From Chlorokybus atmophyticus (lineage: Eukaryota > Plantae > Mesostigma and Chlorokybus algae), in contig RHPI01003116.1 of the NCBI GenBank assembly GCA_009103225.1, positions 1 through 64,000 on the forward strand: a stretch of DNA of 64,000 nucleotides. Reading direction: 5' to 3'. Of the stretch, positions 3,961-63,943 are shown piece after piece. The first letter of the stretch is position 1. The number at the start of each line of letters is the position of its first letter. The position numbers and the translations under genes were made by a program. The notes beneath the pieces are model-generated. The model searched no databases. It was not told the DNA's origin and was given only the letters and a program-made list of their open reading frames with translations.

Positions 3961-6900
3961 GTTTGTGTCGTGAGAAAGGAGAAGCCAGTTTGAAAAGGAG
4001 GAGTTGCAACACTTGATGCCGTCAACTTGAAACTGCAAAAAGTGTCAAACGCATGCTGAAGGTGCACGCAAGAAGGGGTCACAGAAGCAACCGGCAAGCA
4101 AGCTTTTGGTTGTACACTATATTCTCTACATGAACATGCTTGGTGAATCAACAATTATCATTAACATGGTGTATTCTGTTGTACGTGCCTGTACTAAAAC
4201 GCTCTAAGGTATTAAAACGCTCAAAGTTCTCGCACTGTGTGTTGAGAGGGGCGTTGTAATGCTGCTTGCAAGCACATTGCTGACCACTCTTTAGCCTCAA
4301 GCCATTGACAATAGGCTCGCAAAAGGGGGTTGCATCAAGCGGAAATAGGCGTGCGGCTGTTGTGCGATACGTGTTGTGTAAGACGGGGTCGATTGAACGG
4401 CATGTGGTACACACGGTTATATTGCTCGACGTGCAGGGACTGCCACTTTGTCATCTACCAGGAGGTTTGACCATTTACCGACAGCGTCTGACGTGCGCGC
4501 TCCAGCGAGCGCAAGGACTGACGATCCTCGCAAGCGCGGCTGTGCCTGGGCGGGGCCCTGTGCTGATGTTGACGGTGACGATAGAGGAGGACGCCAGACT
4601 CGCCGCAGCTGCGCCGACACTTGTTATAGGCATGGTTAGCAATATGTCCGCATGAACACGTTGTGAGCTATATACTAGAGTGTTTGTGGTATGTGGCTGC
4701 GGATGTGGCATGCTGTGGCACGTTAAATGTAGTCGGTTTTCTATAACATGTTGTGCCATGGTTTTAACGTTCATGCACTAGCGCTGATGATACATAAACC
4801 TTACTTTGAAAGGATAGAGATGCTGGTGTTGACAAGACATACGCAATGCACACAACCATTGTGCAAGCCGTGCCTGTGTGTGCTTGGCAAGCACACACAA
4901 GAACTCGTGGGCCATTCATCAAGCATACCACATGATCTGGCCTTTGATTCAAAGACCGAAGAATGATGCGTATGCCACACCGTGGAGATGAAATAGCTTG
5001 CATTGTTGAATAAAGTGCATAAGTAGCATCATGTGATAATTATCAATTTGTCAATTATACCGTATTGCTATGTTAAACAACCATGATCATTGTTATTGCC
5101 GAGCATTGAATAAGAGTGCAACAAACATGCAACTACATTGTGAAGTATACTGATAAAGATTGCAAATTGCGAGAAATGATATGTTGTGTGTGGATGCATG
5201 CTATGTGTAATATCGCATTGTGTTTTGAAGTTAAACCGCAATTACTCTCAAATGTAAAGACGGACAGCTGTGTTGTGAATTCGTACATCAACACAAACTT
5301 AACTTAGCATGCTCAATTTTCAACACATTATATGTTTCAATGATTTTATCAATAACAAATACAAGATGTGAGTTCGAGAACAAAGGCACAATCTGTGGAT
5401 ATTCCGTTGCCAACATGCATTTATTGTGTGTTCATTAAGTGCAACCCAGCAATGTTGCAAGTGATATCCAATGTTGTTTTCTATGTGTGATGTACAACGT
5501 TGTAATGTGGCAAGTGTTTAATAAAATATTGCTATTCACTACGTAACAACCTGCCGTGCCTTTCGAACTCGTGCCATAGGTGTAAGGACTTTATTACCTT
5601 AAACATGCTGTGCGTTGCAAGAGTGTAACTGAGGATGTAACTGCCACCCTGAACCTTGAGCCTTATGCATTCGCACTTGAAAATGGCAAAGCAATAATAA
5701 AATAATACAACTTTACCATTTCCAAGTCAGACTATATGTCTTTTTAATCTATAAATATCATATCATTGGAAATATCATTTCATTGGTATTTCACGGCGGT
5801 GTTAGACGAGCCAAGCAAATTTTCTCGTTGTGGGCAAGTGCGGCGAGTACGTCTAGTCTGGTACAATCTTCTGTAGTCGGTTTTTTATACGCAGTTGATT
5901 AGCAGCACTTTGATACGCAGTTGATATAGCAGCAATGCAATGCTTCACTGACAGATTCAACTTGTTGGTTCACTTCATTCACTTAGTGAACAATCACTTG
6001 AAACTTGAGAAAGGGTTACGCCCTCAACATTCATAAGTGCGGGGAGGCGCGTCGCCACCAGAGAGTGCCGGCGGCAAGGGAGATAAAGAACCCTGCTCAA
6101 CTTCCAATTCTCTCCCCAACCTCGCTTAGGTTAAATCCGACTTTTAGGCGTGTATTTGCGTATCCACGAATCCGCATATCTTTTCAAATGGCTAAATCCT
6201 CTTGCGGCTATGGGACGCGCGCCAAGTAGGTGCTAGCATACGCCGCTAAAAAGCTAGTCCATGCCTTTGAGATTTTCGCGACTGTTTGCTCGGCCGGGGT
6301 ACTTATGATTATAGCGCCTTCGCTTAATCCTACCCGCATAAAGTCTTAGGGGTTTTCTTTCTCCAAATAGATTCAGCTATAAGTAATTGTTATGTTCTGA
6401 GCTAATTGACTTGTCGTACGCTAACCGTCCTTCGCGGCTTCCCATCACCGCATGAGGAGTCGGAACCCCTAAACCCTCGGTACTTAGGTAGTGATAAATG
6501 TTTATACCTTTTTCGCTACCTTTCGAATCCCAACTTAGGCCTAGGCCTAATTCGATGTAACTTTGCGGAAGGAGCACCTACCTCACCGCATTGATTTCCA
6601 CGAACATAGTTGGCACACGGAAGGTTGCTCCCCAAATGCAGATGCCACAAGCATTCACACACACTGAGAATCAACCATGCACGCTAAGTACTACTTAACG
6701 TAAGGATTAGCTGCATCTGCAGAAGGACTTCTGAAGTTTGTCCTTTAAAAGCCTGTCCTTGCTCACCTCTGACCTCAAGTATAGTATCATGCGGCAGTCG
6801 TCACATTTGCGCGACCTTTATGCTAGGCGATGAAAGCCCCGTAATTTCTAATGATGTTATTGGTCTGCCAATCTCATCATATCTTTTAACGGGCTTGCCA

Positions 6901-13946: not shown

Positions 13947-19971
<6,025 letters not shown>

Positions 19972-37603: not shown

Positions 37604-39734
37604 GGCCCAGCCGGCTAAGCTGGCAAAGCTGCGCTGGCAGTTTCGGCGGCGGCGCTAGAGGCGTCAGCACCGACCTGGCTGCATCTCGCTGTCCCGCCAC
37701 GCCTGGCATTAAAACACAAGAGCCCGCGCCAGCATCACTCCCGGTCACAGGCGTTACGAGCGTCTACTACGACACACAGCACCAGTTGGCGGCGCCGGCG
37801 GCGCCCGCAGCTAGCGAAGAGGCGACGGCGGGCGCATACACGGCAGCAGCAGCACGGGCAACAGCAGCCCGGACGCGGCCGCTTGCCAGGCGAAGATGTC
37901 GTAGAGGCATAAGTACAGAGATTACCCATCAACTGACACCTGTCATTCACTAATCGCGGAGACTCGTGGCACTTTGGGTGCGGCGTTTGACGAGGTGTAA
38001 ACGCTCTGCGCTGCTCGCACAATGGCCGCACGTGATGACTTGCAGGCGAAACGGCTTGCGGCATTCCTGATGTTCTGTAAGCAGCGTGTCACAGCCCACT
38101 CGACCACAAAAGACTTGGTGCTTTTATGGTCGATTTGTGGTAATTTAATGTACCTTCCCGTTACACAGCGAGTGGCGTGCACATTTCAGCGCGCACAAGG
38201 TCCGACGGTGCTGAGCAGTAGTGCGGCAATTGCAGCAGCTGTGCGGGGGTGGACGGGCGCTCACAATATCGCACCCATCTGCCGAGGAGGACGCCCTCCT
38301 CGCAACGGCGGCGTAATCATGTTGCTGTGTGCCTACAAATGTTGGGGCATGACCCTTGGTACATAATTGTATGCTACCTGTCACTTTTTTAATACAAAAA
38401 GAATTTGAGGCATCCATTTGGATGCATCTTGTATTATGTTACTTACATCAAGGATAGATGCATCTAGTCTTTGTTAAGTGCATCTACCTGTTACTCAAAT
38501 ATTTGTCACGCGTAAAAGGCAAGGCATAATCACTCTTAGTCTGCTATGTTGACAGCATGATTGCATGAGAGTTACAACGGCTTGGGTGGGTGCAATACCC
38601 AAATGGTTCGCTCATACAGTAAGTCTTTTAGCTCGTGAGCCTTGGGCATGATAAACCATACAATGCATTGATAAGCAGTCTGTAAAGAGCTGGTCAGTGT
38701 GCAATGCTGACGCATCTGTTCAGGACTTGTCGCAGACTGATGCTCAACCAATTGAGAAGGTGTTGGACAGTCAAGAAGGCATGGTTATCAAAGGGCCTAA
38801 CCCTGATGAAGGGAACCATACTAACCGGTCAACGAGCACAACTATGGAAGTTGATGCACCTGATATGCTGGAGCGATTGTCTCAAGCATACTCAAGAGAT
38901 CCCTGGTTCTTTAGCTTGCTGAAACAAGCAAATGCGGACTCAGTGTGCCGCAATGGTTTATGGTATATACCACTGAAAACCGGTTGTGCCTGACATGCTG
39001 AACCTACAAGAAGACTGCATGTATAAAGCACACAATGCTGTGTACAGCGGGCTCATGGGCATGAAGAAGACCATCAACTCGCTGGAGTGCTTGTACTGGT
39101 GGCCCAGCGGGGCAGCTGATGGAGCAAGGTATATTCGTGACATTTATTAGCGCAACAAGGCCTCGCGCATTAAGCCCGTAAGTCTGCTGAAGCCACTTAA
39201 AATACAAAAGTAGTGGCAAAGTGTGAGTATGGGTCTGATTATTGACTTGCTTGTAACAACGAAAAGACGCAGCGCTGTCATTTTCTTTGTTGTGACCGCT
39301 TAACCAAGAAGGTAAGGTTAGAACATTGCTGCGCTGACATTGATGCACGTGACTTTGCGTTCTGTTTGTTGATACCGTGTTCAAGTTTCACGGGGTGCCA
39401 CAAGCGTTGGTGTAAAATATAGACCTGAAGTTTGTTAGTAAGTTTGGGCAAGCTGCGTGCGAGTACATGGGCACGAAGCAGAGCCTAAGTACCTACCATC
39501 CTCAATCTGATGGTCAAATGGAGAGGGTGAACCAAGTGTTGGAAGATGTGCTGCGCAACTACACTTCTCTAAGGTATGACAGCTGGGATGAGTACTTGCC
39601 TTTAGCAGAGCTTGCTTTCAACAATGCCTGGCATGAGATCCACACAATTACGTTCATTTCTTGGCAACGCCTCTTCCGTTGGACCCGCAATGGCTTTGAA
39701 AGTCCAAGCACTTAAGAGGGTTACTCAGTTTACC

Positions 39735-48703: not shown

Positions 48704-50085
48704 TATACGACCACAAAGCAAGAGCTCTTAAAAGTAGTGCATGCGCGCAGGAAGTGGCGCTGTTACTTAAAGGGGGTGGAAGGCGGCTTCACGGTGATAA
48801 CCAACTATAACCCACTCACTTTCTTATAAACCCAACCAACTTTGTCACGAAGACAAGCAGGGTGGGCAGAGTGTTTGTCTCGCTTTAACTTTACCTGGGT
48901 TTATAGGCTTGGAAGAGTGAACATGGTTGATCCCTTCAGCCGCTCGCCACTGTTGCTGGCAGCAATAATGCGGGCGCGTGGGGTGTCTGCTGTAAACCCC
49001 AAATAAGAGAGCAAACCCAACAATTGGAGCAACGACTAGGTCTCAAGTATGGAGACAGTTTCAGTTACAGCTACCTGACACATTTGTACGTGACTTGTCG
49101 CAGACTGATGCTCAACTCAGCGGGGAGGTGTTGGTCAGCCAAGAAGGCGTTATTACTGAGAGGCCAAACACTAATGAGGAGGACCTTATTAACCAATGGA
49201 CGGGCACAAGTGTGGAAGTTGATGCACTTGATATGCTAGAGCGATGGTCTCAAGCATACTCAACAGATCCCTGGTTCCTCAGCTTGCTCAGATAAGCAGA
49301 TGCGGACTCAGTGTGCCGCAATGGTTGTTGGTACTACAAAGGGAGACTGATTGTGCCTGACATGCTGAACCTATAAAACTGCATGTATGAAGCACACAAT
49401 GCTGCGTACAGCGAGCACATGGGCATGGAGAAGACCATCAACTCGCTGGAGTGCTTGTACTGGTGGCCCATCGTGGCAGCTGATGCAGCAAGGTATTTGC
49501 ATACCTGTGACATGTGTCAGCGCAACAAGGCGTCGCGCAAAAAGCTGTGTAGGTCTGTTGAAGCCACTTTTGATACCGAAGTATCAGTGGCAAAGTGTCA
49601 GTATGGATTCGATTAATAACTTGCCGGCCTGGGTAACAAGGAAAAGACACAGCGTTGTTATTGTTTTTATTGACCGCTTGACCAAGACGATGAGGTTAGA
49701 ACCTAGCCGCACCGATATTGATGCACGTGAGTTTGCATCATGTTCTGTCAATGCAGTGTTCAAGTCTCACGGGGTGTCACAAGAGTTGGTGTCAGATAAA
49801 GACTCAAAGTTTGTTAGCAAGTTTTGGCAAGCTGTGTGTGACTACATGGGCACCAAAAAGAGCCTAAATACAGCATACCATCCTCAATCTGATGGACAGT
49901 CATAAAGAGAGGGTGAACCATGTATTGGAAGACGTGCTGCGCAACTACACTTTGCTAAGGTATGACACCTGGGATGAGTATTTGCCTTTAGCAGAGCTTG
50001 CATTCAACAATGCCTAACATGAGTCCACACAGAGCACGCTGTTCTTCCTAAACTATGGGCGGCAGCTGTTAACCCCCATGGCTTT

Positions 50086-50324
50086 TGTCGTGCCTGCCAT
50101 GGTCGAGGGCAACCTTGTCTCGGACAGGCTGCGGAGGAGTGCTAGTGCTGCACGCATGCTAGTGCCGTGCACTGCATTGGAGTCATGCAAGCAAAAGACA
50201 ACCCCCCAATCGTGGGCATAAGCTTGAAGATGAGCCTACGCGGTGTTTAGTGCGGTGGACGAGCCGATGCCGCTCGCCACCTTTGTGTACAGACTGTGTC
50301 GTAGTGCACACAGTCAACAAGCCA
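50086..50324 (-). repeat. Terminal repeat B2 (239 bp) of the DNMT retroelement
   Basis: 232/239 identical to 50977-51215 by manual alignment (7 transitions). In sense orientation it ends ..GGCACGACA. Confidence 0.92.
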
Positions 50325-50618
50325 CTACGATAGGTAGTGCTGTAGACACAGTTCTTTGCATGAGCGGATAGAATGATACACTGTTAAGTGAGGTGAATGA
50401 GTGTGCAACACGTGGATACAACACCCTGACTACTGAAACAACACACCATCGACAAGCTCACAGCAATGACAGGCACAGCGCACAAGAGCATGCACCGTGT
50501 CTCACGCAGTAAGGGAATTCTTGGCAACTGGGGCAGCGTGCTTCCAGTTCAAGTCGCTTCACAAGCTCTTTAGAAACAGAGTCTTTACTTCTTAGTACTC
50601 CTAGTACTCACAGTACTC

Positions 50619-50666
50619 ACTTACAGTGTCACCAGCCAGTCTGGTGACGTGACTTCCTACTTATAC
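50619..50666 (-). promoter_or_regulatory. Putative LTR promoter (TATA-like TATAAG) and transcription start / self-primer segment in repeat A
   Basis: Sense-strand GTATAAGTAGG at ~50657-50667 lies ~25-30 nt upstream of GGTGACACTGTAAGT (50633-50619). That 15-mer is the exact complement of the PBS-position sequence at 60873-60887. Confidence 0.5.
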
Positions 50667-50976
50667 ATGTCAAATCATGACTGTGCAGTGCCACGCGGGC
50701 ACTAGGCCAACGGTCACATCGAGGCCTCATGCTATTTCGGAAATCTCCTAAGACTCGATATAGCACATGCGTGATTAACAGACTTGCAACTGATCAGCTA
50801 TGCGCGGTCCCTACAGACAGGTCTATAAAGTAGCCCTAGCTACATGCTACATGAGTGGTAAAGTAGCTAGCAGTAGGCTGGGGCTCGCGCGGTCTTCATG
50901 CTGGTAGTCCGGGCGTGGGGCTGGGTGTAGGCATGCTTGAGAAGAACTGGCATGCGAGGGTAGATGGCATGACAGC

Positions 50977-51215
50977 TGTCGTGCCTGCCATGGTCGAGGG
51001 CAACCTTGTCTTGGACAGGTTGCGGAGGAGTGCTAGTGCTGCACGCATGCTGGTGCCGTGCACTGCATTGGAGTCATGCAAGCAAAAGACAACCCCCCAA
51101 TCGTGGGCATAGGTTTGAAGATGAGCCTACGCGGTGTTTGGTGCGGTGGACGAGCCGATGCCGCTCGCCACCTTTGTGTACAAACTGTGTCGTAGTGCAC
51201 ACAGTCAACAAGCCA
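50977..51215 (-). repeat. Internal repeat B1 (239 bp), directly after the polypurine tract
   Basis: Paralog of 50086-50324. In sense orientation it starts TGGCTTG immediately after GGGGGGG. Confidence 0.92.
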
Positions 51216-51289
51216 CCCCCCCTGAGATTCTGGGGTAGCCCTCTGCTCCAGAACTCAGTTCCTACCGACTGTGTGGGGGACCGTTGATG

Positions 51290-51430
51290 CGGCAGTCATC
51301 GCACCAGTACTCCCACAAGGGTACTGCGTCCAGTGGAGGGTCAAGGCAGTAGCAGTGCATGCCTTGATTACAGCCGTCGCATAACATCATCAATGGGTCG
51401 TCGTCAGCGCTGCCACACTTCTCGCATCGG
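51290..51430 (-). CDS. PHD finger (C4HC3) at the integrase C-terminus
   Basis: CEKCGSADDDPLMMLCDGCNQGMHCYCLDPPLDAVPLWEYWCDDC has the full C4HC3 pattern. It lies one frameshift/deletion (~51500) from the integrase frame. Confidence 0.88.
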
Positions 51431-54400
51431 GTGCTGCGCAGCGGACGCGGATGCTGGATCTTGGTGAAGCCAGCAATGTAGGGGAGATGACAGGTTGTCC
51501 CAACAGGTCCAGTACCCCTGTGGGGTGCACCTTCAATACCTTGTAGACAGCACGCCCGACGGAGGTATCGAGGGTGTCGCGTGTAGACGCCATACGGTAG
51601 ACGAAGTCTCCTGACTCGAAGCGGCGCTCCCGCTCCTTGTAGAAACCACTGCGCACACGCTCGTAACGCAGCGTGTCGCGGTGCTGCGCGATGCGCAGGT
51701 TGTTGAAGGCCATGGGGACTGTGTGTTCGAACAGCGCACTGCGCACTGTCAGACCGAACAGTAGATAGTATGGGCTGTACTCTCGCAGGGCTGCCTGCTT
51801 GGACAGCCGGTAGCCCATTGCTACCCATGAGAGGTGATCATCCCAGGTATTCTTCTCGTAGGCAAGGACGTACTTGCGCAGTGCCTTCTTGATGGTCTGC
51901 ACGGTACGCTCGGCGAGGCCGTCGGCCTGTGGGTGGTCGCGTGAGGTGCGACGGTGGTCGATGAAGCATCTGTCGATAAGCTTGTCGAAGGCTCCTCTGA
52001 ACTCCGTACCCTGGTCGGTGATGACTTCAGCGCAGCTGCCGAAGCGTCCGAGTACATGGGAGAGGAAAGCCTGGGCTACTCCCTCACTGCTCTTGTCGGG
52101 CAGGGGCACCAGCTCCACCCACTTGGAGAAGTGCTCGATCATGACGAGGATGTAGCGGTTGCCTCGCGCTGAGGGCGCTAGGTCTCCGAGGATGTCCAGT
52201 CCCCAGCGGTAGAACAACCCGGAAATGGGAAGGGGATGCAAGGTGGCATTGCGCGTGTTGAGGCTGGCGCGAACCATGTCACACTGCTGACAGTTGCTGA
52301 CGAACTCCCGCACCTGTCTGTGCACCCCATACCACCAGTACTGGGTCCTGACCAGGCTGACCGTGCGCTTGACGCCGAAGTGCCCGAGCTCGGTGTGAAG
52401 GGAGGAGATGATGCCTTCACGTGCAGCTGGTGTGGGGACCTCCTGATCTTTTGTATCCGTCGATACAGCCTGTCGTTGGCCCAGCGGTAACGCTGAGTGC
52501 GTTGCCGAACGCGGTCCTTCTCGCGTGCGCTCATGCCTGCTGGAAGTTGTCCAGTCTGAAGCAGTGCGAGGGATGGCTCGTCCAGCTAGATGTCTTGTCG
52601 TGTGTCGGTGGGTGCCAACTCCTCATCATCTACCTTAGGGTCGGCCGCGATTGCTTCTTCTGATAAAGGATCGGTGGTGGTGATGGCGGGCTCGAGAGCG
52701 GGCATGTCCCCGTCTGCTGCTGCCTCAGCGGTCTGAGTCCTGCGTCCCGAGCGTAGCGTAGCGACAGTGAACATGGTGGCCACACCTGAAGGTGCAGCTG
52801 TAGGACCCAACTCATGTCGGGCGCCTGTGGCGTCGTTGGTGCTGAGGTGGGGGTTACGGCTGAGGCCATCCGCATCCTGGTTGGCAAGGCCTGCGCGGTG
52901 TTCCACCTCGAAGTCGTACTCCTGGAGCAGCAGCGCTTATCGTGCTAACTTTCCTGTCAAGTGCTGGTTGTTCATTAGCCACTTGAGGGGTTGATGGTCG
53001 GACCAGTTGGAACTGCCGTCCAAACAGGAAGGGTCGGAAGAAGGAGATGGCCCACACTGCGGCGAGACACTCCCCTTCGTAGCTGCTGTAGTTGGCCTCA
53101 GCACTGTTGTTGCTGCGGCTGGCGTACGACACTATGCGCTCCTTCTTGTTGTTGTCATGCTGTACGAGCACGGCCCCCATGCCGAGCTTGCTCCAGTCTG
53201 TGTGCAGGATGAACGACCTGGTGTAGTCAGGGCGTTGCAAAATGGGAGCTGTGGTGAGGCGGAGCTTCAGCTCCAAAAAGGCCTCATGTTGTGCCTCCTT
53301 CCACAAGAACTCGGTGTCCTTCTTCAGTAGTTCGTTGAGAGGCCTTGCGATCTTGGCAAAGTTTTTGACAAATTGGCGGTAATAGTTGGCAAGGCCGAGA
53401 AAGGCCCGCAGCCGCGTGAGGTCTGTGGGGGCAGGGATAGCCACCAGGGCCTCCACTTTGGCCTGCTGTACGTATACACCATGGGGCACAATCATGTGTC
53501 CTAGGTAAGGTACCTTGCGGGTGAAGAAGGTGCACTGGTCAGGGTGCACCGTCATCCCGACTTCCTTCAGCCTCTGTAGCACCTCTTCGATGTGCTGGAG
53601 ATGCTCCTCATTGCTGTGACTGAAGATGAGGATGTCGTTGATGTAGCAGCGCGCGAGGTCCAACCCCTTAAGGGTTTTGTCCATGACGCGCTGGAACTTG
53701 GCCGGAGCGTTCTTCAGTCCGAAGGGCATGACCTTCCACTGGTACAGCTGCCGGTTTCCCCAGAAGGAAGTCTTGTGCTTGTCCTCCTCCTTGATGGCGA
53801 TCTGGTTGTACCCTTGGCGCATATTCAGGATACTAAAGACCGTGCAGTCTCCTACATCGTCAAAGATGCCTTCCGCGGTAGGCATTTGATACCTGTCCTG
53901 CTTGGTCTTATTGTTGACGGGGCGATAGTCGCCACACATGCGCCGGTCTGTCCAGTTGCCTGCTGAATCTTTCTTCAAGGGCATGACGGTCGCCGCCGCA
54001 AAGTCCGATGTGGACTCCTCGATCAGGCCTGCATCTAGCAGCGCTTTGCACCTCTGTTCCACCAAGTCTTCTTCTAGCTTGGAGAGGCGGTACTGTCTTC
54101 TGAACACCGGTTCGGTGTCCACTAGTTCAATGTCCATCTGGTATGCTGAGCATATGCCCAGCTCCTTCACACTGAAGTTGAATTGGCTCCTCCACTTGTT
54201 GAGGAGAGCCTCGAGTTGCTCTCGAGTCTGGCCTGTGGCCAGCGGTCGAATGGCGTGGGACCACGAGGTAGCGTTGACGACCACTGGAATGTCTTCCACA
54301 GTGACTGCTGCCTGCTCCTCCATGTGGGCGGTCTCGAGGGCGGTGTGTGCTGCTTTGGTCTCTGAAAAGCGATCAATCCACCCCCCAGCCAGGTGTTCGA

Positions 54401-54439
54401 GCTCTTGGAAGGACACATGGCGGTCCTGGAGAGCAAAGC

Positions 54440-55400
54440 ACATTTCCAAGTACCACACCATGCTGTTCTGATCCATGGCGCGCCCTAACAACTGACACTG
54501 TTGACTGGTTGTCAGCGTGGAGCCTGTGATGCTGCCTGGAAAGAATCCCATAGCACGCTCGCGCTCGCGGGCATTGGGTTCTTCCAGCTGTCCAGTGTTG
54601 GAGTCCAACACCATGCCGTCGCCTCCATTGCGGAACGCGTAGGAGCCTGGATAGGATACAAGCGTGGGTAGTGCGCGGCGCGGCTGACCAGGCTGGTTGC
54701 ACTGGTAGAAGTGGTGGCGGTCACGGCGTGTGACCGGTTGCGCTGTGCGTCCAGGGTCCAGGATGTCATCGTCGACGAGATTTCGTGGCCGATTGCTGTA
54801 TAGGTATTCTGCCAGAAACAGGTCCTCCACAATGGCCAGGTTGGTCCACTTGGCGCGGACGCGGTGTGCGCGAGATCCATGACGCGCGGCGTTGATTTTG
54901 AGAGGATGCCCCAGCAAGGAGCATACTTGTCGATAGGCCTTGGCGACGTGATGCCGCTTGTCATCCTCGGAGTGCACATTCTCGATGATGTACCCCAAGG
55001 GCCTAGCGATCTGACTGGTCTGTAGGAGTTTGATGACTCTCATTAGCTCCCAGAACAGCTGTGAGCGAGGATCAGAGAGCCCTTGGCCTCTGCCTGCCCT
55101 GGAGTGCCCTTGACACTCCCATCCTGCTATCAGCAGGTCAATGTTGCCGACTGCCTGCAGGTGATCCTTGGTAATCCAGCGGATGTCCTGCGGTAGAGCC
55201 TTCTGGCTCCCTTGCAGTGCCGACAGTGGTAGCTGCTGCGGGTAGCGCTGGTGCAGCTGTCGTAAATGATGGCTCAGAGCCTCCTGTGCATGAGGGTCAG
55301 GGTCACAGTAGAGGTACTTGGTGACTGTTGTTCCTGTGTTGAGGACAGCCGCAAGCCCACTGCCTATGCCTCCGAACAGCTCCAGCACGGTGATGCCTTG
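54440..55400 (-). CDS. C5 cytosine DNA methyltransferase domain (DNMT3-like) in frame within the 1626-aa retrotransposon ORF 52854-57734
   Basis: Motif I VLELFGGIGSG; IV IDLLIAGWECQGHSRAG; VI YIIENV; VIII SRAHRVRAKWTNL; IX/X ERERAMGF..QQCQLLGRAM. All are in catalytic order and in the same frame as the flanking protease and RT. Confidence 0.9.
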
Positions 55401-58400
55401 TTGTCGGCGGAACATGTGGAACTCCACAACTCCCGTAGCTATGTGGTACTGCTCCTGCACTGTAGCCTGGTCTTTGTAGACAGGGAAGTGTGCAGTGAGC
55501 TGAGGCCTGGTCAGCAGCATGTGTGCTGCTACTTGTGCGCTCCAGCGACGCTCGGATGGCTCCTGAAAGGCCACTTCTTTGGTGACAGTCTCCTGAGACT
55601 CATCGTACGGTGTAAGAGAGTCCTCTTTAGCGTTTAGGCTCGGGCTCGAGCTCGTTGCAGTTGTCCTCGGCTGCGTTCGGGCACGAAGCACACATGAGCT
55701 TTTTGTAAGACTGTAGGTGGCTGCTGCAGCCGATCTTCGTTGCGAGCGGTCCTTGGCCACCAGTTCGAGAGGTAGGAATCCCTGCTCCTCTCCATCGTCC
55801 TCATCCCAATGCGGTCGAAACCATGCCTGCTCAGTCCAGCAGTCCATCCCCATGCCGACAGGGAAGTTGCAGTCCTGTCCCAGCAGTAGGTCAAAGGACT
55901 CGGCATCGGTGACGACACACCGTTGTACAATCTCGGTGCTGTGGGAAGGGTTTAGTCCTGTGAGGCGAATGCTCACAGCCTGCTTGGTAAGGCCAAGCAC
56001 CTTGTCGCGGTTGCCGGTTGCGGTGTCTAGCTGGTAGGGACAGGGAAGCAGCTCAGCGCTGGTGATGCCGAGATCTCGTGCGAGATAGCGCCCAATGATG
56101 ACAGGCTGTGCACCAGTGTCCAGCATCACGCGTTTGGGTGCCCGCCCATTGATGGTCACGTGCTTGCCTTGGTTGGCGATCATGGCTGCATTGGCGTTGA
56201 TGCGCAGCCTCTTGCAGCGACGGAACCTCTTGCGTGGAGAGACTGTTGCTTTACTCTCATCTGCGGGGCCTGACCGTAGGGCAGCCAGGGCTCCTCTGCC
56301 TGATGGATCTTGTGGGCCTTCTTGTTCTCGGCTTTGTCCAAACCGTCCTTGTCGCGGTTGCTGGTACACGCGTGGTGGCCTAGGCACTGGAGGTGCTGCT
56401 GCAACCTGTCCAAGTGGAGGTGCAGGAGGGTTGACCCTCTGTGCAGCTGTTGTCATGCCAAGAGGAGTGGCCAGTGGCTGTGGCGGGAACCCTGGAGGAC
56501 CTGGTGTTTGCGGGACTGCCTCTCGTGCAGCCTGCTCCTCTGCATAGGTCCATCGCACAGTATGGGCTGCCTCTCTGACTAGTGTACCTTCCCATGTAGC
56601 CGCCGCATTGTTGTCCACATCTATATAGCGATGGTTCTGAGGCATGGGCTGCAGGTACACTGCGCGTAGGAGCCGAGCTGTCATGTCGTGGGTGATGGTG
56701 GGCACCCTGAGGATCCCTGCCATGCAAGCGTCCCATCTGCCGTTGACCACTCCCACTTCCAGCACTGTTATTGCTCGTGTGCGTACAGTGAGGCGGGTCT
56801 CTGGCTGCTGGACATGCTGCTCGTAAGCAGCGATGCGCCTGCGCTGACGTCCTGCCTCCACTCCTGGCAAACTCAGTATAGCCTCCAGAGCTCCCTCCAG
56901 AGTGTCAGTGGCGGCGGAAGCCACTTCATCATAGGCTTGTCGTATGGAGCGAAAGAACGCGTCCACCCACGCTATTCTGGTGCCGAATGCGAACAACGGG
57001 ACTGCGGGATGGTTGGTGACCAGCCACGTCACTAACCGTGCGCGTGCCGCGTTGCCATTGTCTCGCATCCCAAGCATCTGCCGAAGTCCGATGCCTTCTT
57101 GCCGATGCAGCATGGTTGCTTGTCGCAACAGAGCAGTGCGTAGTTGTTGCTCTCCAACCAGTCCTGCTCCATCTCTTTGTGTACACCCTTGTGGTGTAAG
57201 GTAGCCCCTCCCTGGCTCCCTTTCGTCCTCAGGTAGATCCTCCACCAGCGCAGGCAGCAACGGGGCGATCACCCCCCTGGTTTGTTGAGCCAACGCCCTC
57301 GCTTGGTCAGAGTTGGTCTCGACGAAGAGCGGAGTGGTGCTGGAGGATGGACCAGCAGTTGGTGACTGAGGTATTGGTGCACGTGTAGCTTCAAGAGCTT
57401 GTTCACGTGCAGCAATGGCGGCAGCTTGATCCTGTCGCCAATGATATGCTTGTTCCAGTGCGTGGTAGCGCTGATGAAGACGAGCGGTTGTAGGAGGTCC
57501 GAGTGCTTCATCAGTGCCCAAAGGCAGGTCGGCTGCGTCGGCGATGCGCTGCTGGACGGCGTCTCGGCGGTCCCGATACGTGTCCAACGGGCTGGGTTCA
57601 AAGGTGGTGGTTGGCATGCGTGCAGGCTGGCGCGGGGCGATCTGCATGTTGTTGTGCAACGCCCAAAAAAGCTGCAGAGCCAACTCCAACACTACAGGTG
57701 GGCTGTAGCTGATCAAAAACACCCTGTCACGCATCGGAGGTGCAGTGCCAGCAATGATCTCATCTTCTAATTGGTGTTAAGTGAGTGCTGGAAGGGTGTA
57801 AACCTCTGGTAGCGGGAAGACGCGATCATCGCGGGCGACACGCGTGGTGCGCTCCCCCCCCCCGACTGAAGGCGATGGTAGTGGGGTCTGCTCCGCGCAG
57901 GATGGTTTCCCATGCTCGCTCAGCTTGCTGACCAGTTGGGACAGCCTGAGTGACGTCGAGAGCGGGCAGAGTGGCTACGCGCGTCGCTGCAGAGACAGCG
58001 GGCTCGACGATGGCCATTGTGGCAGTTGCGACGGTATCGGTCGGTGGTGCGAGAGTTGTCTCAACGTTTATGGACAGAGGCACTGCTGCAGTGGGAAGTG
58101 CACCGCCCACTGGTGCAGATTCGGTAGAGATGGCGGCTGCCGCTAGTGTGCTCACCAGCGTCGGCGTCACGGTGCCCACCGGTGTACCAGGTTGTGGTGC
58201 AACTGGAGTGGGTACTGCTGACGTTGGTGGAGTCGACGTTGTAGCCGGTGTGGCTGTTGCTGCGGAGGCAGCACCACTGGTGGCTTCGGAGGAGGTGCCT
58301 GCTGATGTTGTTGCAGCTTCCCCTCGTGCTCGTCGTGATGGTTGCACGCGGGACGGAGTGTTCCCGTCTCTTTCGCGTTTTGCAGCCATCAGCGCCCATC

Positions 58401-59753
58401 GGGCAGTGTAGCAGGCGCGGTAGTCCTGCTCCTTGTCTTCCTCCAAGCGTGCCATACGCGCCATGAGGGCTGCCATATGGTCATCAGCTGGTGCGTTGGC
58501 TGAAGCCTTGGCGGCAACAGCAGCAGCGCGCGGACGTGTCTCTGGTCCCTTCGCTGAGGAGGTCTGTTCTTCCCCATGTAGCCTTGCTCTTCCTTGCGAA
58601 CACTGGCATTGTTGTTGTTGTTACTGCCACCAGCGTTGTTGCTGTTGTGGGCTCCAGTGTTGTTGCTATTGTAGCCACTGAAGTGGTTGCCAGTGTGGCC
58701 CCCAGTGTTGTTGCTGTTGTAGCCACTGAAGTTGTTGCCAGTGTGGGCTCCAGTGTTGTTGCTGTTGTAGCCACCGAGGTAGTTGTGGTTGTAGGTGTTG
58801 GCGGGCCTCAACTCTGAGAACTTGAGCCAGCAGACTGACTCCAAATGACCAATCTTGTGACATTGGTCGCAAACCAAAGTTGAGTGTTCTTCGGTGCACT
58901 CCTTTTGGTAGTGCCCATGCCGTCCACAGCGATGACACAGCACAGGGGCAGCAAGTGCAGCATGAGCTGACCGTTTCCCTTTGTCGCGTGCTGGTGGAGC
59001 GTCCCGGCCACGGTCGCGGCCAGGAGGCTCAGTTGTCGTGCTGACTACAGGCCGTACGGCGCTGCGGTTGGTGTCTAGCACTGCCTTCTCAAACACCAAG
59101 CGCTTGTGGATGGCTTGTGCAGTCTCGAAGGCTTCTTTGAGGGTGTAGCCAAGGGGCCTGCTGTAGTTCAGAGTCAGGCGTGTCGACTCGCTCAGAGCAG
59201 CATCCAACTCATCGACGTATATCACTGCAGCAGCCTCCTCACTGACAATCTTGTAGTCAGTGTCCTTCAGCAGACCTTCCAGTCTGGAGTACAAGCGGAG
59301 GGGATCCTCATTGGGCTTGCGTCGGAAGCGTCTCAGCTCCTCAACCTTGCTGGTGGTCTGAGGAGGGAAGGTACGGCGCAGGGCAGCGTACAGGTCCTTG
59401 AGTGGAGAATTAAAGATGGCAGCACCTACGGTGATGGCTGGTGCGCGCAGTGCTACTGACCCGAGGGTGAAAGCGCTGCCTCCTGCACGAGAGCCATGTG
59501 TTGCTGGAGGTAGAGGAGTACCCCACTCTGCGGCTGCCGCTTGCTGTACAGCTCTTTGTTCCTCAATAATGATGGCAGAACGGTCAAGGATGCGGACTCG
59601 ACGTGTGGCCTCCTTGGACTCAACTTCTGCAGGGGTCAAGTTGACAAGTACCAACTCTGGTTCCTCCTCCTCTGCCTGCTTGAGAGCTGCAGCTATGGTC
59701 AAGCCTGTTACTGCAACTGAAGTGGCAGGTGGAACGACACCTGCTGGACGGTG

Positions 59754-60210
59754 TGTTGAAGGTATTACATGGGTGATGCTTGTATCCGGTCAGCTTGCCC
59801 TTCATACAGGAGTCGAGGGTCGAAGGTACCAGGAAGAAGCGCATGGGCTCCAGACTTAGCAAGACGGTCGAGTCATGACGGACTCAGGACCAGGCTGCTT
59901 GGTAGAGCCTTGGGAGAAATCGCGTAGCTTTGTAAATACGTAAGCTTAGCAGGCGTGGCTTAGCTTGTTGGAAAGCTCTGGTTGTGAGCTAGACAGCGTA
60001 GCTTACAGAACAGCAATCGGCTGAGTATAGCGCACGCGGTGCTTGCCAATGTAGACGTGTGTAGAGACTGGCGGGGTATAAAGCCCTGACTTGTTGCAAT
60101 GAAGAAAAGAGGTCACGATGTAGCATGTGTGCGGATGCTATGGCGGCAGTAGCAGTCATGCTCTTGTGTTGATGTTGTTGGCGTGTCACTTGCACGTGTG
60201 TATGTCAACA
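59754..60210 (+). mobile_element. Solo Copia-family LTR inserted in the gag of the DNMT element
   Basis: TGTTGA...TCAACA ends, CGGTG TSD on both sides. Shares CTTGTAT.CGGTCAGCTTGCCC, TAGCTTGTTGGAAAGCTCT and GTATAAA(A)GCCC with the LTRs at 34865 and 37156. Excision fuses ORF 60186-60683 in frame to ORF 58389-59702 (..SASLHRPAGVVPP..GLTIAAALK). Confidence 0.92.
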
Positions 60211-60917
60211 CGGTGCAGGGATGCAGATGCTATGGTGCTGGCAAGCTCGCCATAGCCGTCTACTCGATGCAGTTCAGCAACGGACTTCCAGACATCGTGT
60301 GCTTCATGATCAAGATACTGAGCAGCAATGTGGAAAGAGATCTCATCTGACCAGTCTTTGTTCTTCAGTGCTTGCTGCCGCATCTTGGAGTGGAACTTGA
60401 TGATGAACTCATCCAGCGAGGTGGTGCCGGTACGTCCGGAGAAGCGCAGGGATGTGGTTGAACTGGAAGATTCCATCTCGTTGTCGTCGCTGTCCGATGA
60501 TAGTGGAGAAGCTAGATGACGAGGAGTAGAGTGGAGCGGGGTGAAGCTGGAGATGGAGCGCGAGCCTCTGCTGCTGCGGTCGATGCTTCCGTCACTGGTC
60601 CGCTCGTAGGTGAGGTTGGTGGTTGGGCTCCAACTGCTGAGGTCACCCTCGTCTATTGGGGAGAACGGGGTGGGCCTGCTCATACAGCTGGTCCAGAGGT
60701 GAAAGGGTAGAGTGCTTGTGCTCTACCGTCTATCCTGATGCTGTTACCACCCAACACACTAGTGCTTGTGCGCACTATGTGATGACATTGATAATGAATG
60801 CCCAGCGATGTATCCCTGGGTGCAGACTGCACTATCTGATGCAGATTGCAACACACTCACTTGTGCAAAGAGGGTGACACTGTAAGTCAACAAGCCACTA
60901 CGATAGGTAGTGCTGTG

Positions 60918-61420
60918 NNNNNNNNNNNNNNNNNNNNNNNNNNNNNNNNNNNNNNNNNNNNNNNNNNNNNNNNNNNNNNNNNNNNNNNNNNNNNNNNNNN
61001 NNNNNNNNNNNNNNNNNNNNNNNNNNNNNNNNNNNNNNNNNNNNNNNNNNNNNNNNNNNNNNNNNNNNNNNNNNNNNNNNNNNNNNNNNNNNNNNNNNNN
61101 NNNNNNNNNNNNNNNNNNNNNNNNNNNNNNNNNNNNNNNNNNNNNNNNNNNNNNNNNNNNNNNNNNNNNNNNNNNNNNNNNNNNNNNNNNNNNNNNNNNN
61201 NNNNNNNNNNNNNNNNNNNNNNNNNNNNNNNNNNNNNNNNNNNNNNNNNNNNNNNNNNNNNNNNNNNNNNNNNNNNNNNNNNNNNNNNNNNNNNNNNNNN
61301 NNNNNNNNNNNNNNNNNNNNNNNNNNNNNNNNNNNNNNNNNNNNNNNNNNNNNNNNNNNNNNNNNNNNNNNNNNNNNNNNNNNNNNNNNNNNNNNNNNNN
61401 NNNNNNNNNNNNNNNNNNNN
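60918..61420. other. Assembly gap (N) covering the predicted 5' repeat A1
   Basis: Run of n characters. Confidence 0.99.
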
Positions 61421-63943
61421 GGGGGCTTTGTTTGGCACCCACCGTTACCGGGCAAATTGGTCCCCTAACACAACACCCCCCATTGATTTTGGGGGGTGGG
61501 GTGGGGGGGTCTTAATAAAGGGGGGTTGTATTCGACAAAATACAGTAAGTTCAAGCTAGCTTGTGTGTTGGTTGATTGAATGCAAATTGGCTCATGGAAA
61601 GCAAGCCGCTTGAAGCCAACTTTAGCACCATGTAAGAAAGGTTGGCCAAAGGCCTATCCGACAGTTAGTCATTAAGTGGAGGTCAATTTTACAGGTTGTG
61701 TGTATGTGTGGGCACATGCACGCGTGTGTGTGCGCGTGTGCGTAACAGATGGTTGTACAACGATTTGTATGGCAATGTTGCACCTCTGTTATACCGTACG
61801 AGCTGCCTTACGATGTACTTTGAGTGAGGATGAAAGCTAACAAGTAAATCAATTACCTGCAAGTGTAGTCATGGTCATTTTTATGTGCTACACGCGTCAT
61901 ATTGCAAATGTTTTGCAACGCGACGCTTTGTTCGTAAAAATGAAGTTCATATGCGTGAGTCTATCGTATTTACCATAATATAGCCCCATTTAAATCACAG
62001 CACCCCAACCTTTTTTGCCAAGGGCTGTGTGTGAGGGAGGGCTATTCGCTGGACCATGTAACTCACACAAGTTTGGCGGTATTTCGCGATGCAAATTTGC
62101 CGCACGCGCAATCTTACGGCATGCACTGCCTCTGCCATGGCTATGCAGGCGAGTGTTGATGGCAATATCTTCTTATAAGTCATGAAAAGGCCTAGAGTTG
62201 GCTCGTGTAAGCAGCATAACGCACAAAGCTGACCAAAGACATTTGATGAAAGGGAGGGGGGGGGAGGGGGTATACTTTGCATTAAAGGCGAGTAGAGCCC
62301 CTCACCCTTTCCTTGAGGGGCCATGTAATACGAATGTAGCTTTATCACTGAATATACGACACGATATGAGACAAGGGGTGCTGCAAGCAATAATGCCACT
62401 GTCTTGGTTGGCACGTGCAGATTAGCACACTTATGTACATCAAGAAGACTCTACGGCGAGTTCAAGCCACAAGGAGGGAACGTGGCTGCAATTTGCGTTC
62501 TTTATGCATATGCAACGTGTATAGCAGCATGCCATGCAAGGCCATGAACAACTTATATTTGGCAACTTTGCCTACCCTCAACATACCCTGAATGTTATGT
62601 TCAATTAAGCACTCGCAAGCAATGGGGCAAAGCATGTAAGCATGAATACCGTTAGATGCAGTGTTAATGACGCTGTTGTGTCACCCCATCACCAACGCTG
62701 CACATCACGCGTCACGCGATCATCACGACGCCACCACTGCGTTGACAACTCACATCAGCCTAACATGCGGTACATCAGGCTGATGTAAGGTACGTGCCGG
62801 ACGACGCTGAGCCTCACGGGGTTGGGAAACGGTCACCGCTGGCTCACCATTTCATGCATTGACAGTGACAGTTTGTCACTGTCAATGCATGAAATGCGGG
62901 ACATGTACTGATACCATCTAAAACGGGCAGTTCAAAATCTGCGCGCCGAGCAAAATCGATTGCGGCGTGAGTCAGCGTGAGTCTAGCTCAGCGCGCATGC
63001 CGACAAGGCACTGCCCGTTGTTCACACAACCTCTTGCTAGGAAAGTAGTAACTTCGATCGGGCACATCATGAATATCTAACTACTAGCTTGGCATTATGC
63101 ATTTTAACGATGGAGCACCTGAACGTATATTGCGCGGGGGTTTGACGAATTTGAAAGCATACCTTTGGGACGGCGCAAGGTCCGCCGCGCAGCATACGAA
63201 GAATTCACGGCACTACGCGACATGCACGCAAACAAAGGTGTACTGTGCGAAAGTATTGTGTAACAGAAGTTGAACTTTTGTTACAAAACAATTCACTTGG
63301 GTGAATTACCGTCCGTCGCATTTATGCATTGAGCGACGCGCCTTCAGGCGGTAATACATTATTACTAATACTTGACGGCGGTAATACCGGACCCTACAAG
63401 AGTGGATTGAAGATAGAGTATGATTACGACGCAATGTTTTCTCACCGAGGGCCTTAACAAGGTAGCTGTTAGGCCTATGGTCCTTTCTTGGGCGTGGGCC
63501 GGTCGCAGGCAGGCTGCGGGGCTATATAATAAACACAACACCCGCTGCGACAACTAGTGGTGAATGCTGTGTTCCGTTGCATTGTGAGAGAGCCAAGCGA
63601 ACTGAAGCTGACTGAAGCTGACTGAAGGCGTGCTACCCCAGAGTTGGTTGCTTGAACCGGCCGGCTCAGCCTCCCGCTAGCAAAGGTGCGCTTACTTGTG
63701 TCGCCGCCGGCAATGCTTTGCCCCCTCCCCTACTTCTTCTCCCAACAGAAACTTGTGGATGCCTCCTGCTGAGATGACTGCGTTCTAAGTGTACTTATCG
63801 TGCCTTGCTGTCTGAGTGGGTCAGCTCAGCCATGATGCATGCATGGCGCCACTGTCTAACCATCAATTGCATGCTTATGTCGTGGGAGGCATGCGCGCGC
63901 ACCTATACCTAACATGCACTCTCTCTATGGTGTGCAGGACAGG

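What the first reader, a model, noticed from the sequence alone, without database searches (positions are those of the whole stretch)
50086..60917. DDE-integrase retroelement with split direct repeats (A1-ORF-B1-A2-B2) and an internal circle-junction site
Seen, in sense orientation: PPT (G7) -> B1 (51215-50977) -> GC -> A2 (50974-50325) -> B2 (50324-50086). The 5' side shows the end of A (32-bp identity 60885-60916 = 50312-50343) followed directly by the leader, with only 13 nt of B. The B1/A2 junction reads GGCACGACA-GC-TGTCATGCC, i.e. CA..TG with 9-bp imperfect inverted repeats like integrase att sites of a circle junction. The outer terminus at 50086 ends in the same GGCACGACA. Known: this layout typifies tyrosine-recombinase retroelements (PAT, Ngaro, TOC1), but this element encodes a Gypsy DDE integrase and no recombinase. 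I recall a Repbase Gypsy group (Troyka) with an analogous layout; this needs checking. Inference: RT makes BA-ORF-BA, the 13-nt terminal redundancy allows circularisation, and integrase cuts the B|A junction, so integration would be from a circle.
Basis: partly seen in the sequence, partly recalled or inferred. Interest (0 to 1): 0.95.

Follow-up and report, generated by a model that had tools for sequence, protein, structure and literature searches.

The report
Gypsy retrotransposon with split, permuted repeats
This is an old, broken copy of a green-algal Ty3/Gypsy retrotransposon carrying a DNA methyltransferase, whose repeats are laid out A...B-A-B instead of as two LTRs. That layout was noted in print in 2018, but the sequence signals here and in over 20 relatives suggest its integrase cuts a conserved palindrome inside the repeat, which would need a circular or end-joined DNA intermediate.

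Summary
B1 (50977-51215) and B2 (50086-50324) are 97% identical, A2 lies between them, and the end of A plus 13 nt of B reappears at 60885-60916 next to the leader. A1 itself is lost in a 503-N gap.

It is not a one-off or a misassembly:
- Contigs from two independent studies carry both the B-GC-A junction and the A/leader junction at multicopy depth.
- At least 9 complete and 9 partial relatives (metagenome contigs, Marchantia) have the same A..B-A-B layout.

The element is a Ty3/Gypsy type (PR-DNMT-RT-RNaseH-IN-PHD) with no tyrosine recombinase.

- The only sequence shared between lineages in the repeats is a palindrome, CACGACA-GC-TGTCATG, at the B|A junction.
- Its two halves are the integrated ends, flanked by 4-bp target duplications (5 of 11 exact; 0 of 110 in controls).
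- A G-run PPT precedes B, and a Tf1-like self-priming site follows A, with a TATA box about 31 nt upstream of the primer segment.

So the LTR as reverse transcription defines it is B-GC-A, a permutation of the integrated ends.

Circle-based integration is the best reading but is unproven, and the mirror permutation it predicts was not seen. The Troyka recollection is wrong. The layout was published for Klebsormidium in 2018, and this scan has noted it repeatedly in this genome.

The parts
50082..50085 (-). candidate 4-bp target-site duplication next to the B2 end (CTTT on the + strand, AAAG in sense)
   Evidence: Relatives have 4-bp TSDs at this position. In this copy it is inferred only.
50086..50324 (-). 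B2, the outermost repeat. Its sense 3' end ..GGCACGACA is the integrated right terminus.
   Evidence: 97% identical to B1.
50325..50974 (-). A2 (650 nt). It starts in sense with TGTCATGCC. It holds the inferred promoter, R and U5.
50660..50665 (-). TATA box (TATAAG in sense), 32 nt upstream of the self-primer segment
   Evidence: A TATA box sits 31-34 nt upstream in every lineage checked.
50619..50633 (-). 15-nt segment GGTGACACTGTAAGT (sense), the inferred 5' end of the transcript and self-primer, complementary to the PBS
   Evidence: No shuffle out of 2000 exceeded 11 nt.
50966..50985 (.). internal att-like palindrome at the B1|A2 junction: GGCACGACA-GC-TGTCATGCC, with perfect core GACAGCTGTC at 50971-50980
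   Evidence: It is the only part of the repeats conserved in relatives.
50977..51215 (-). B1, the internal copy of B, starting right after the PPT
   Evidence: Contigs of two studies bridge B1-GC-A2.
51216..51222 (-). polypurine tract (seven G in sense)
   Evidence: A G-run abuts the start of B1 in all relatives.
51262..53002 (-). integrase (rve) and C-terminal PHD finger, split over at least three frame changes near 52990-53002, 52440-52460 and 51495
   Evidence: rve 9e-9, PHD 4e-8. (tblastn with the intact relative P0002).
52854..57734 (-). 1626-aa ORF: aspartic protease, DNMT (C5 methylase), RT, RNase H
58389..59702 (-). gag-like ORF with a weak CCHC zinc knuckle and a 24-nt periodic stretch at 58583-58785
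60873..60887 (-). primer-binding site for self-priming (ACTTACAGTGTCACC in sense)
60888..60897 (-).
   Evidence: The junction at 50312 recurs in 5 contigs of other copies.
60898..60916 (-). last 19 nt of A1. The rest of A1 lies in the gap.
60918..61420 (.). assembly gap (503 N), expected to hold about 631 nt of A1
   Evidence: Inference from relatives.
61426..61429 (-). CTTT just right of the gap, a possible second copy of the TSD, preceded by GGGGG that fits neither A nor B
   Evidence: Weak: about a 4% chance match.

Best explanation
The stretch is a dead copy (frame changes in the integrase) of a streptophyte Ty3/Gypsy retrotransposon of the DNMT3-carrying clade, on the minus strand.

Shown:
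- Its repeats are A1 ... PPT-B1-GC-A2-B2.
- The same layout recurs in relatives.
- In relatives the integrated ends (TG at the A start, CA at the B end) carry 4-bp target duplications.
- The two ends are the two halves of a palindrome that also sits intact at the B1|A2 junction. That palindrome is the only non-coding sequence conserved across lineages.

Inferred from sequence signals:
- Transcription starts in mid-A, about 31 nt after a TATA box.
- The first 12-16 nt of the RNA fold back onto the PBS just after A, giving Tf1-type self-priming.
- Plus-strand synthesis starts at the G-run just before B.
- Reverse transcription therefore yields B-GC-A-internal-B-GC-A, in which the integrase sites are internal.

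Inferred mechanism:
- The two reverse-transcription ends are joined (A end to B start), as in a 2-LTR circle or an equivalent end-joined form.
- The DDE integrase cuts after CA on both strands of one palindrome. This gives a linear, 3'-processed A-internal-B-GC-A-B that is inserted with a 4-bp duplication.
- A one-LTR circle, or use of both sites, would give the A-internal-B copies that are also seen.
For: - Domains: PR, DNMT, RT, RNase H, rve and PHD, with no recombinase.
- Family-wide junctions in this genome: contigs of two studies bridge B1-GC-A2 at depth 60-92, against 45-74 for internal sequence. Five contigs show the A+13 nt/leader junction.
- Layout in relatives: 9 complete and 9 partial A..B-A-B copies, plus Marchantia.
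- Palindrome: CACGACA-NN-TGTCATG at 24 B|A junctions. The variants differ only by transitions.
- It is the only match between this element's 891-nt B-GC-A and 1.1 Mb of relatives' loci.
- TSDs: 4/4 identical in 5 of 11 copies and 3/4 in 3 more. The cross-copy control gave 0 of 110 with 4/4.
- PPT: a G-run abuts the B start in every lineage.
- Self-priming: perfect leader/mid-A complementarity in all lineages. It is 15 nt here, 15 nt in L001, 12 nt in L020, L024 and Marchantia (with compensatory changes), and 11-16 nt in L009, L076 and L023. A TATA box lies 31-34 nt upstream in each.
- Precedent: retroviral integrases cleave palindromic LTR-LTR junctions (PMC1180852, PMC1905944, PMC4372172).
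Against: - No circle, RNA end or new insertion was observed. Every mechanistic step rests on sequence signals.
- A symmetric 2-LTR circle has two equivalent palindromes, so it should give A-B-A-internal-B as often as A-internal-B-A-B. None was found among 14 complete relatives. The one unresolved candidate is in Haematococcus.
- The A-internal-B copies could equally arise after integration by B1 x B2 recombination.
- A1 of this copy is in a gap, and the bases right of the gap (GGGGG before CTTT) do not read as the A start.
- Three A1 copies in relatives are preceded by AGC, which is unexplained.
Confidence: 0.6

Rival explanations
1. No free circle is involved. The integrase acts on the linear B-GC-A-internal-B-GC-A DNA at its internal sites. 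Using the left A-start and the right B-end gives A-internal-B. Cutting one palindrome and inserting its two halves leaves two free reverse-transcription ends. Host end-joining or template switching by RT (helped here by the 10-nt redundancy) then closes these to give A2|B2.
For: - It uses the same sequence signals.
- A-internal-B copies with clean CA ends and TSDs are common, e.g. L028 and L070.
- The A2|B2 joint varies slightly between relatives (L038 lacks 2 nt, L015 lacks 3 nt), as end-joining would give.
- Both observed forms use the left A-start. A directional, linear pathway could explain this better than a symmetric circle.
Against: - It is also unobserved.
- Cutting the right palindrome alone would again give the missing mirror permutation.
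- It requires a transient chromosome break.
Confidence: 0.25
2. It is a DIRS/PAT/Ngaro-like element that moves by a tyrosine recombinase supplied in trans or lost from these copies. The split repeats would serve the DIRS-type circle-closing scheme.
For: The A1-internal-B1-A2-B2 order is the hallmark of PAT and Ngaro elements. The 2018 paper describes the Klebsormidium repeats as DIRS-like (PMC5890265).
Against: - No recombinase in 19 ORFs here.
- Intact relatives encode a single gag-PR-DNMT-RT-RH-IN-PHD protein with rve and the H2C2 zinc finger.
- TG..CA ends and 4-bp TSDs are signatures of DDE integration, not of tyrosine recombination.
- The RT and RNase H match Gypsy-type Pfam families.
Confidence: 0.05
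3. B1 is a one-off duplication, a misassembly, or a later rearrangement of an element with conventional A-B (or B-A) LTRs.
For: - The 5' repeat lies in an assembly gap.
- The Marchantia copy also has a 6-kb gap between A2 and B2.
- Short-read assemblies break at such repeats.
Against: - The B-GC-A and A/leader junctions occur at multicopy depth in contigs from two independent studies.
- The same layout appears in many independently assembled contigs with different flanks.
- More distant Gypsy relatives in the same search have ordinary LTRs (L042, L074), so the method can detect them.
Confidence: 0.03

Closest known systems
KnitGypsy-Dnmt3 of Klebsormidium nitens (de Mendoza et al. 2018, PMC5890265)
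   Same: A Gypsy-type Pol with a Dnmt3-like methyltransferase inside it, in a streptophyte alga. The Fig. 4c legend states that the repeat structure is that of a DIRS element while the domains are Gypsy.
   Different: The paper gives no termini, TSD, att site, PBS/PPT or mechanism. No Klebsormidium sequence was on hand for direct comparison. This copy also carries a C-terminal PHD finger, which the paper does not mention.
PAT / Ngaro / DIRS tyrosine-recombinase retroelements (including TOC1)
   Same: Split direct repeats in the order A1-internal-B1-A2-B2, with the internal B1|A2 junction carrying the two termini side by side.
   Different: Those encode a tyrosine recombinase and make no target duplications. 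This clade encodes a DDE integrase, has TG..CA ends and 4-bp TSDs, and has Gypsy RT and RNase H.
Tf1/sushi (and plant Tcn1) self-priming Ty3/Gypsy elements
   Same: The PBS is complementary to the first 11-16 nt of the element's own transcript instead of to a tRNA (PMC6317226 summarises the group).
   Different: Tf1-type elements have ordinary paired LTRs whose ends are the integrase sites. Phylogenetic relation to them was not tested.
Integrase cleavage of the palindromic LTR-LTR junction of retroviral 2-LTR circles (foamy virus and HIV-1; PMC1180852, PMC1905944, PMC4372172)
   Same: A CA-NN(NN)-TG palindrome made of the two viral ends is cut by integrase to regenerate integration-competent ends.
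   Different: In retroviruses the palindrome forms only when the DNA ends are ligated, and this route is a side pathway. Here the palindrome is built into every LTR and the joined reverse-transcription ends are not palindromic, so the route would be obligatory.
Troyka (Kojima 2025, PMC12440569)
   Same: A Gypsy-like group with unusual termini.
   Different: Ordinary LTRs, CG..CG termini, 3-bp TSDs, animals only.

Membership tests
Ty3/Gypsy (Metaviridae) LTR retrotransposons | Pol order PR-RT-RNase H-IN with a DDE (rve) integrase | tested here: met
   Pfam hits in that order on the minus strand. Colinear with the intact relative P0002.
Ty3/Gypsy (Metaviridae) LTR retrotransposons | Two identical LTRs flanking the internal region | tested here: not met
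   The repeats are split as A..B-A-B. The 5' side has the A end plus 10-13 nt of B only.
Ty3/Gypsy (Metaviridae) LTR retrotransposons | TG..CA termini with short inverted repeats and 4-6 bp TSD | tested here: met
   Relatives: TGTCATG...CACGACA with 4-bp TSDs. This copy: the CA end is seen at 50086; the TG end is in the gap.
Gypsy-DNMT3 elements of streptophytes (KnitGypsy-Dnmt3) | C5 cytosine methyltransferase domain inside Pol | tested here: met
   PF00145 at residues 849-928 of the 1626-aa ORF, between PR and RT. Relatives carry it too.
Gypsy-DNMT3 elements of streptophytes (KnitGypsy-Dnmt3) | DIRS-like repeat arrangement A-coding-B-A-B | tested here: met
   B1-A2-B2 and the A1 end are seen here. 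The full layout is seen in relatives.
Gypsy-DNMT3 elements of streptophytes (KnitGypsy-Dnmt3) | Sequence relatedness to the Klebsormidium elements | not tested
   No Klebsormidium sequence was retrieved. The best database relatives are 48% identical proteins from metagenomes and Marchantia.
DIRS/PAT/Ngaro | Tyrosine recombinase ORF | tested here: not met
   No PF00589 hit in 19 ORFs on both strands.
DIRS/PAT/Ngaro | No target-site duplication | tested here: not met
   4-bp TSDs in relatives.
Troyka | CG..CG termini and 3-bp TSD | tested here: not met
   The termini are TG..CA and the TSDs are 4 bp. The definition is from PMC12440569.
Tf1/sushi-type self-priming elements | PBS complementary to the 5' end of the element's own RNA | tested here: met
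   11-16 nt perfect complementarity in all lineages, compensatory changes, and a TATA box about 31 nt upstream. The RNA 5' end itself was not observed.
Tf1/sushi-type self-priming elements | Phylogenetic placement within the Tf1/sushi clade | not tested
   No reference set was available and no tree was built.

The most novel reading that the evidence does not exclude
A whole clade of streptophyte Ty3/Gypsy elements (Chlorokybus, Marchantia, moss-associated contigs, probably Klebsormidium) has permuted its LTR so that the integrase recognition sites lie together as a palindrome in the middle of the reverse-transcribed LTR. Integration then depends on joining the cDNA ends (a 2-LTR circle or equivalent) and on the retroviral-type integrase opening that palindrome. 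This would be a natural, obligatory version of the circle pathway long considered and abandoned for retroviruses.
Probability: 0.5. Interest if true: 0.85.

Novelty: new member of a known kind. Interest (0 to 1): 0.6.

Why it matters
Textbook LTR retrotransposons and retroviruses integrate a linear DNA whose ends are made by reverse transcription. Circles are treated as dead ends. In this clade the primer sites (PPT, PBS) and the integrase sites disagree by a fixed permutation, in lineages as far apart as Chlorokybus and a liverwort. The linear product therefore cannot be the direct substrate.

If confirmed, this would show:
- that a DDE integrase can use an internal palindromic site as a matter of course;
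- how DIRS-like split repeats can arise without a tyrosine recombinase;
- why LTR-finding software and short-read assemblies mishandle these elements (gaps at A1 here and at A2|B2 in Marchantia).

It also gives simple, testable predictions: circles with an A|B joint, a transcript start at 50633, and cleavage after CA on both strands.

Tried and rejected
- Closing the gap. These show the family junctions but not the flank of A1. No RNA run holds the element, so transcript ends could not be mapped.
- Using a paralog of the host element (38707-39646, 82%) to rebuild the empty site. The homology fades about 50 nt before the insertion point, so this was uninformative.
- Depth ratios as copy-number evidence for two A and two B per element. 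They are inconsistent (1.1-2.0x), and the tool warns against this use.
- Marchantia TSD. The scaffold has a 6-kb N run between A2 and B2, so the flanks may not belong together.
- Haematococcus L003 as an example of the mirror permutation. The outer 5-bp match CTTGA is suggestive, but the 5.4 kb between B and the second A holds another element, and the structure was not resolved.
- A tRNA-type PBS. TGGCTTGTTGACT begins with TGG, but the same 13 nt begin B, and the adjacent 15-nt self-complementarity explains priming better.
- Literature searches for a described mechanism or for further Gypsy elements with split repeats. They found only the 2018 figure-legend remark.
Full report
**1. The observation**

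On the minus strand, read in sense, the stretch runs: leader, gag, pol, a run of seven G (51222-51216), B1 (51215-50977), GC (50976-50975), A2 (50974-50325), B2 (50324-50086).
- B1 and B2 are 97.1% identical over 239 nt. All seven differences are transitions.
- 60885-60916 is identical to 50312-50343. The last 19 nt of A and the first 13 nt of B are therefore followed by the leader instead of by the rest of B.
- The B1|A2 junction reads GGCACGACA-GC-TGTCATGCC, with a perfect 10-bp palindrome GACAGCTGTC at 50971-50980. B2 ends in the same GGCACGACA at 50086.
- A1 itself is hidden by a 503-N gap at 60918-61420.

**2. What the element encodes**

- The 1626-aa ORF at 57734-52854 holds an aspartic protease, a C5 DNA methyltransferase domain, RT and RNase H.
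- Downstream pieces hold an rve integrase core and a PHD finger.
- An upstream ORF has a weak CCHC knuckle.
- Against an intact 2358-aa relative (P0002), the copy is colinear but changes frame at about 52990-53002, 52440-52460 and 51495. The integrase of this copy is therefore broken.
- None of 19 ORFs on either strand matches a tyrosine recombinase.
- The element sits inside the integrase gene of another, plus-strand retroelement (49387-50085; paralog at 38707-39646).

**3. Not a one-off or a misassembly**

The element is multicopy in Logan contigs of runs from two separate studies.
- Contigs bridge B1-GC-A2: 50946-51160 at depth 59.6, and 50946-51152 at depth 91.8. Internal sequence has depth 45-74.
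- Five contigs match A up to 50312 and then continue into leader sequence. The junction of A plus 13 nt with the leader therefore recurs in other copies.

Earlier notes of this scan report the same layout at many other places in this genome (s1-078763, followed up; s1-192524, s1-190507, s1-078792, s1-179369, s1-078796, s1-183730, s1-177140, s1-078805). I treat those as leads. They also name the organism as Chlorokybus, which I did not verify.

**4. Relatives**

A protein search found a large family with DNMT, RT, RNase H, IN and PHD in green algae, Marchantia and metagenomes. The best match is 48% identical.

I fetched 83 loci. Self-comparison and cross-annotation with A and B probes gave:
- 9 complete A..B-A-B copies: L009, L015/16, L020, L023, L024, L025, L038, L059, L076.
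- 9 partial copies with B-A-B after pol.
- The same order in Marchantia: A1 4374-4617, B1 15727-15792, GC, A2 15795-16047, then a 6-kb N run, then B2.
- 5 complete and about 6 partial copies with A..B only. In these B ends exactly at ..CACGACA before unrelated flank.
- One contig (L001) with 2.2 tandem units of 8262 bp, each carrying a single PPT-B-GC-A.

More distant Gypsy relatives found in the same search have ordinary LTRs (L042, L074).

**5. The palindrome**

- At 24 B|A junctions the sequence is CACGACA-GC-TGTCATG or a variant differing from it only by transitions. Decay of methylated CG and CHG sites could account for such changes.
- A sensitive blastn of this element's 891-nt B-GC-A against all loci finds similarity only at positions 232-252. 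Those matches fall exactly on the B|A junctions of L062, L007, L002, L076, L030, L012, L011, L009 and L008.
- A non-coding island conserved between elements whose proteins are below 50% identical is strong evidence of function.

**6. Integrated ends**

- In 11 relatives with both ends defined, the element starts at TGTCATG (the A start) and ends at CACGACA (the B end).
- The 4 bp on either side are identical in 5 copies (CATA, ATAA, CCAA, TTTT, TACA) and differ at one position in 3.
- Pairing flanks across different copies gives no 4/4 match in 110 comparisons.
- TG..CA ends with 4-bp duplications are the mark of a DDE integrase and argue against a tyrosine recombinase.
- For this copy, the 4 bp before 50086 are CTTT. 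CTTT also occurs at 61426-61429, five bases after the gap, but it is preceded by GGGGG rather than by the A terminus. I count this as weak support only.

**7. Reverse-transcription signals**

- A G-run abuts the first base of B1 in every lineage.
- The sequence right after A1 is perfectly complementary to a segment in the middle of A:

| Copy | Complementarity |
|---|---|
| This element | 15 nt (60873-60887 with 50619-50633; no shuffle of 2000 above 11 nt) |
| L001 | 15 nt |
| L020 | 12 nt, ACTCAAAGAACT / AGTTCTTTGAGT |
| L024 | 12 nt, ATTCGAAGAACT / AGTTCTTCGAAT (two compensatory changes relative to L020) |
| Marchantia | 12 nt |
| L009, L076, L023 | 11, 13 and 16 nt |

- A TATA box lies 31-34 nt upstream of the mid-A segment in each lineage. 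Here it is TATAAG at 50665-50660.
- This is the signature of Tf1-type self-priming, in which the first bases of the transcript prime minus-strand synthesis. It confirms the separate first-reader note s1-177229.
- It follows that U3 is B-GC plus the first half of A, and R-U5 is the second half of A. The LTR as made by reverse transcription is therefore B-GC-A.

**8. Mechanism**

The linear product B-GC-A-internal-B-GC-A has ends that are not inverted repeats and are not the integrated ends.
- The integrated form A-internal-B-GC-A-B contains the A end joined to the B start. This is the two reverse-transcription ends joined together.
- It is bounded by the two halves of one palindrome.
- The simplest route is joining of the ends (a 2-LTR circle or equivalent), followed by integrase cutting after CA on both strands of one palindrome. 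That leaves the usual recessed CA-3'OH ends with 2-nt GC overhangs.
- Retroviral integrases can do this on LTR-LTR junctions (PMC1180852, PMC1905944, PMC4372172).
- A one-LTR circle, or use of both sites on the linear DNA, would give A-internal-B. Such a copy lacks the terminal redundancy needed for another round of replication.
- None of these intermediates was observed. This section is inference.

**9. Points that do not fit, or are open**

- (a) A symmetric circle should give A-B-A-internal-B as often as the observed form. None appears among 14 complete relatives. A Haematococcus locus may be one, with CTTGA on both outer sides, but it is unresolved. Both observed forms use the A start next to the PBS, which hints at a directional process.
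- (b) The 13-nt overlap is really 10 nt of U5 identical to the B start, plus 3 chance bases. It is family-wide in this genome but absent from relatives, which have 0-3 nt. It may ease precise end-joining or template switching in this lineage, but it is not the general mechanism.
- (c) The A2|B2 joint is 2-3 nt shorter in two relatives. This is compatible with end-joining at each cycle, but also with later mutation.
- (d) A-internal-B copies could also arise by B x B recombination after insertion.
- (e) Three A1 copies are preceded by AGC.

**10. Comparison with what is known**

- The layout is in print. The Fig. 4c legend of de Mendoza et al. 2018 says the repeats of Klebsormidium Gypsy-Dnmt3 elements are arranged as in DIRS while the domains are Gypsy. 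It gives no analysis of termini, TSDs, priming or mechanism.
- My searches found no later treatment.
- Troyka is unrelated to this question: it has ordinary LTRs, CG..CG termini, 3-bp TSDs, and occurs in animals.
- Self-priming is known in Tf1/sushi and plant Tcn1 elements, but those have ordinary LTRs.

**11. Verdict**

- It is a new member (Chlorokybus, per earlier notes) of a kind already recorded, and this scan has met it repeatedly in this genome.
Together these make the offset between reverse-transcription ends and integrase ends hard to escape, and turn circle-type integration into a testable hypothesis.
- It also adds a caveat that any model must explain: the missing mirror permutation.

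Noticed in passing
window 54440-55400 (within ORF 52854-57734, minus strand): A C5 cytosine DNA methyltransferase domain (PF00145, E 2.6e-10) sits between the protease and RT of Pol. It is covered by a separate note of the scan.
   Followed up: partly
window 51274-51492 (minus strand): A PHD finger sits at the C-terminus of the integrase, where chromoviruses carry a chromodomain. It is shared by most relatives.
   Followed up: partly
window 49387-50085 and 38707-39646 (plus strand): The element is inserted into the integrase gene of another retroelement. That retroelement has an 82% identical paralog 10 kb upstream in the window.
   Followed up: partly
L001:1-18357 (ENA metagenome contig): 2.2 head-to-tail units of 8262 bp at 99.8% identity. 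Each unit is pol plus a single PPT-B-GC-A-PBS, with no second repeat. This could be a tandem array, a concatemer, or a one-LTR circle assembled round and round.
   Followed up: partly
L003:2950-19445 (Haematococcus lacustris): A PHD-bearing Gypsy without DNMT shows the order A-B, 5.4 kb containing another element on the opposite strand, then A-internal-B. The 5-bp sequence CTTGA lies on both outer sides. This is possibly the mirror permutation of the split layout.
   Followed up: partly
L005:15031-15620: This copy has B1-GT-A2 and then runs into unrelated sequence exactly at the reverse-transcription-defined end of A, with no B2.
   Followed up: no
window 58583-58785 (minus-strand gag region): Six copies of a 24-nt period (GTTGTTG-rich on the + strand) lie inside the gag-like ORF. 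They give a low-complexity repeated peptide.
   Followed up: no
window 50570-50616: In other genomic copies (runs X1, X3) these 45 nt of A are replaced by AGCTTT. Several A positions carry family-wide substitutions relative to this copy.
   Followed up: no
L002:16048-22037 (Marchantia) and window 60918-61420: Independent assemblies have gaps exactly at the repeat joints of these elements (A2|B2 in Marchantia, A1 here). This suggests that the split repeats systematically break short-read assemblies.
   Followed up: no
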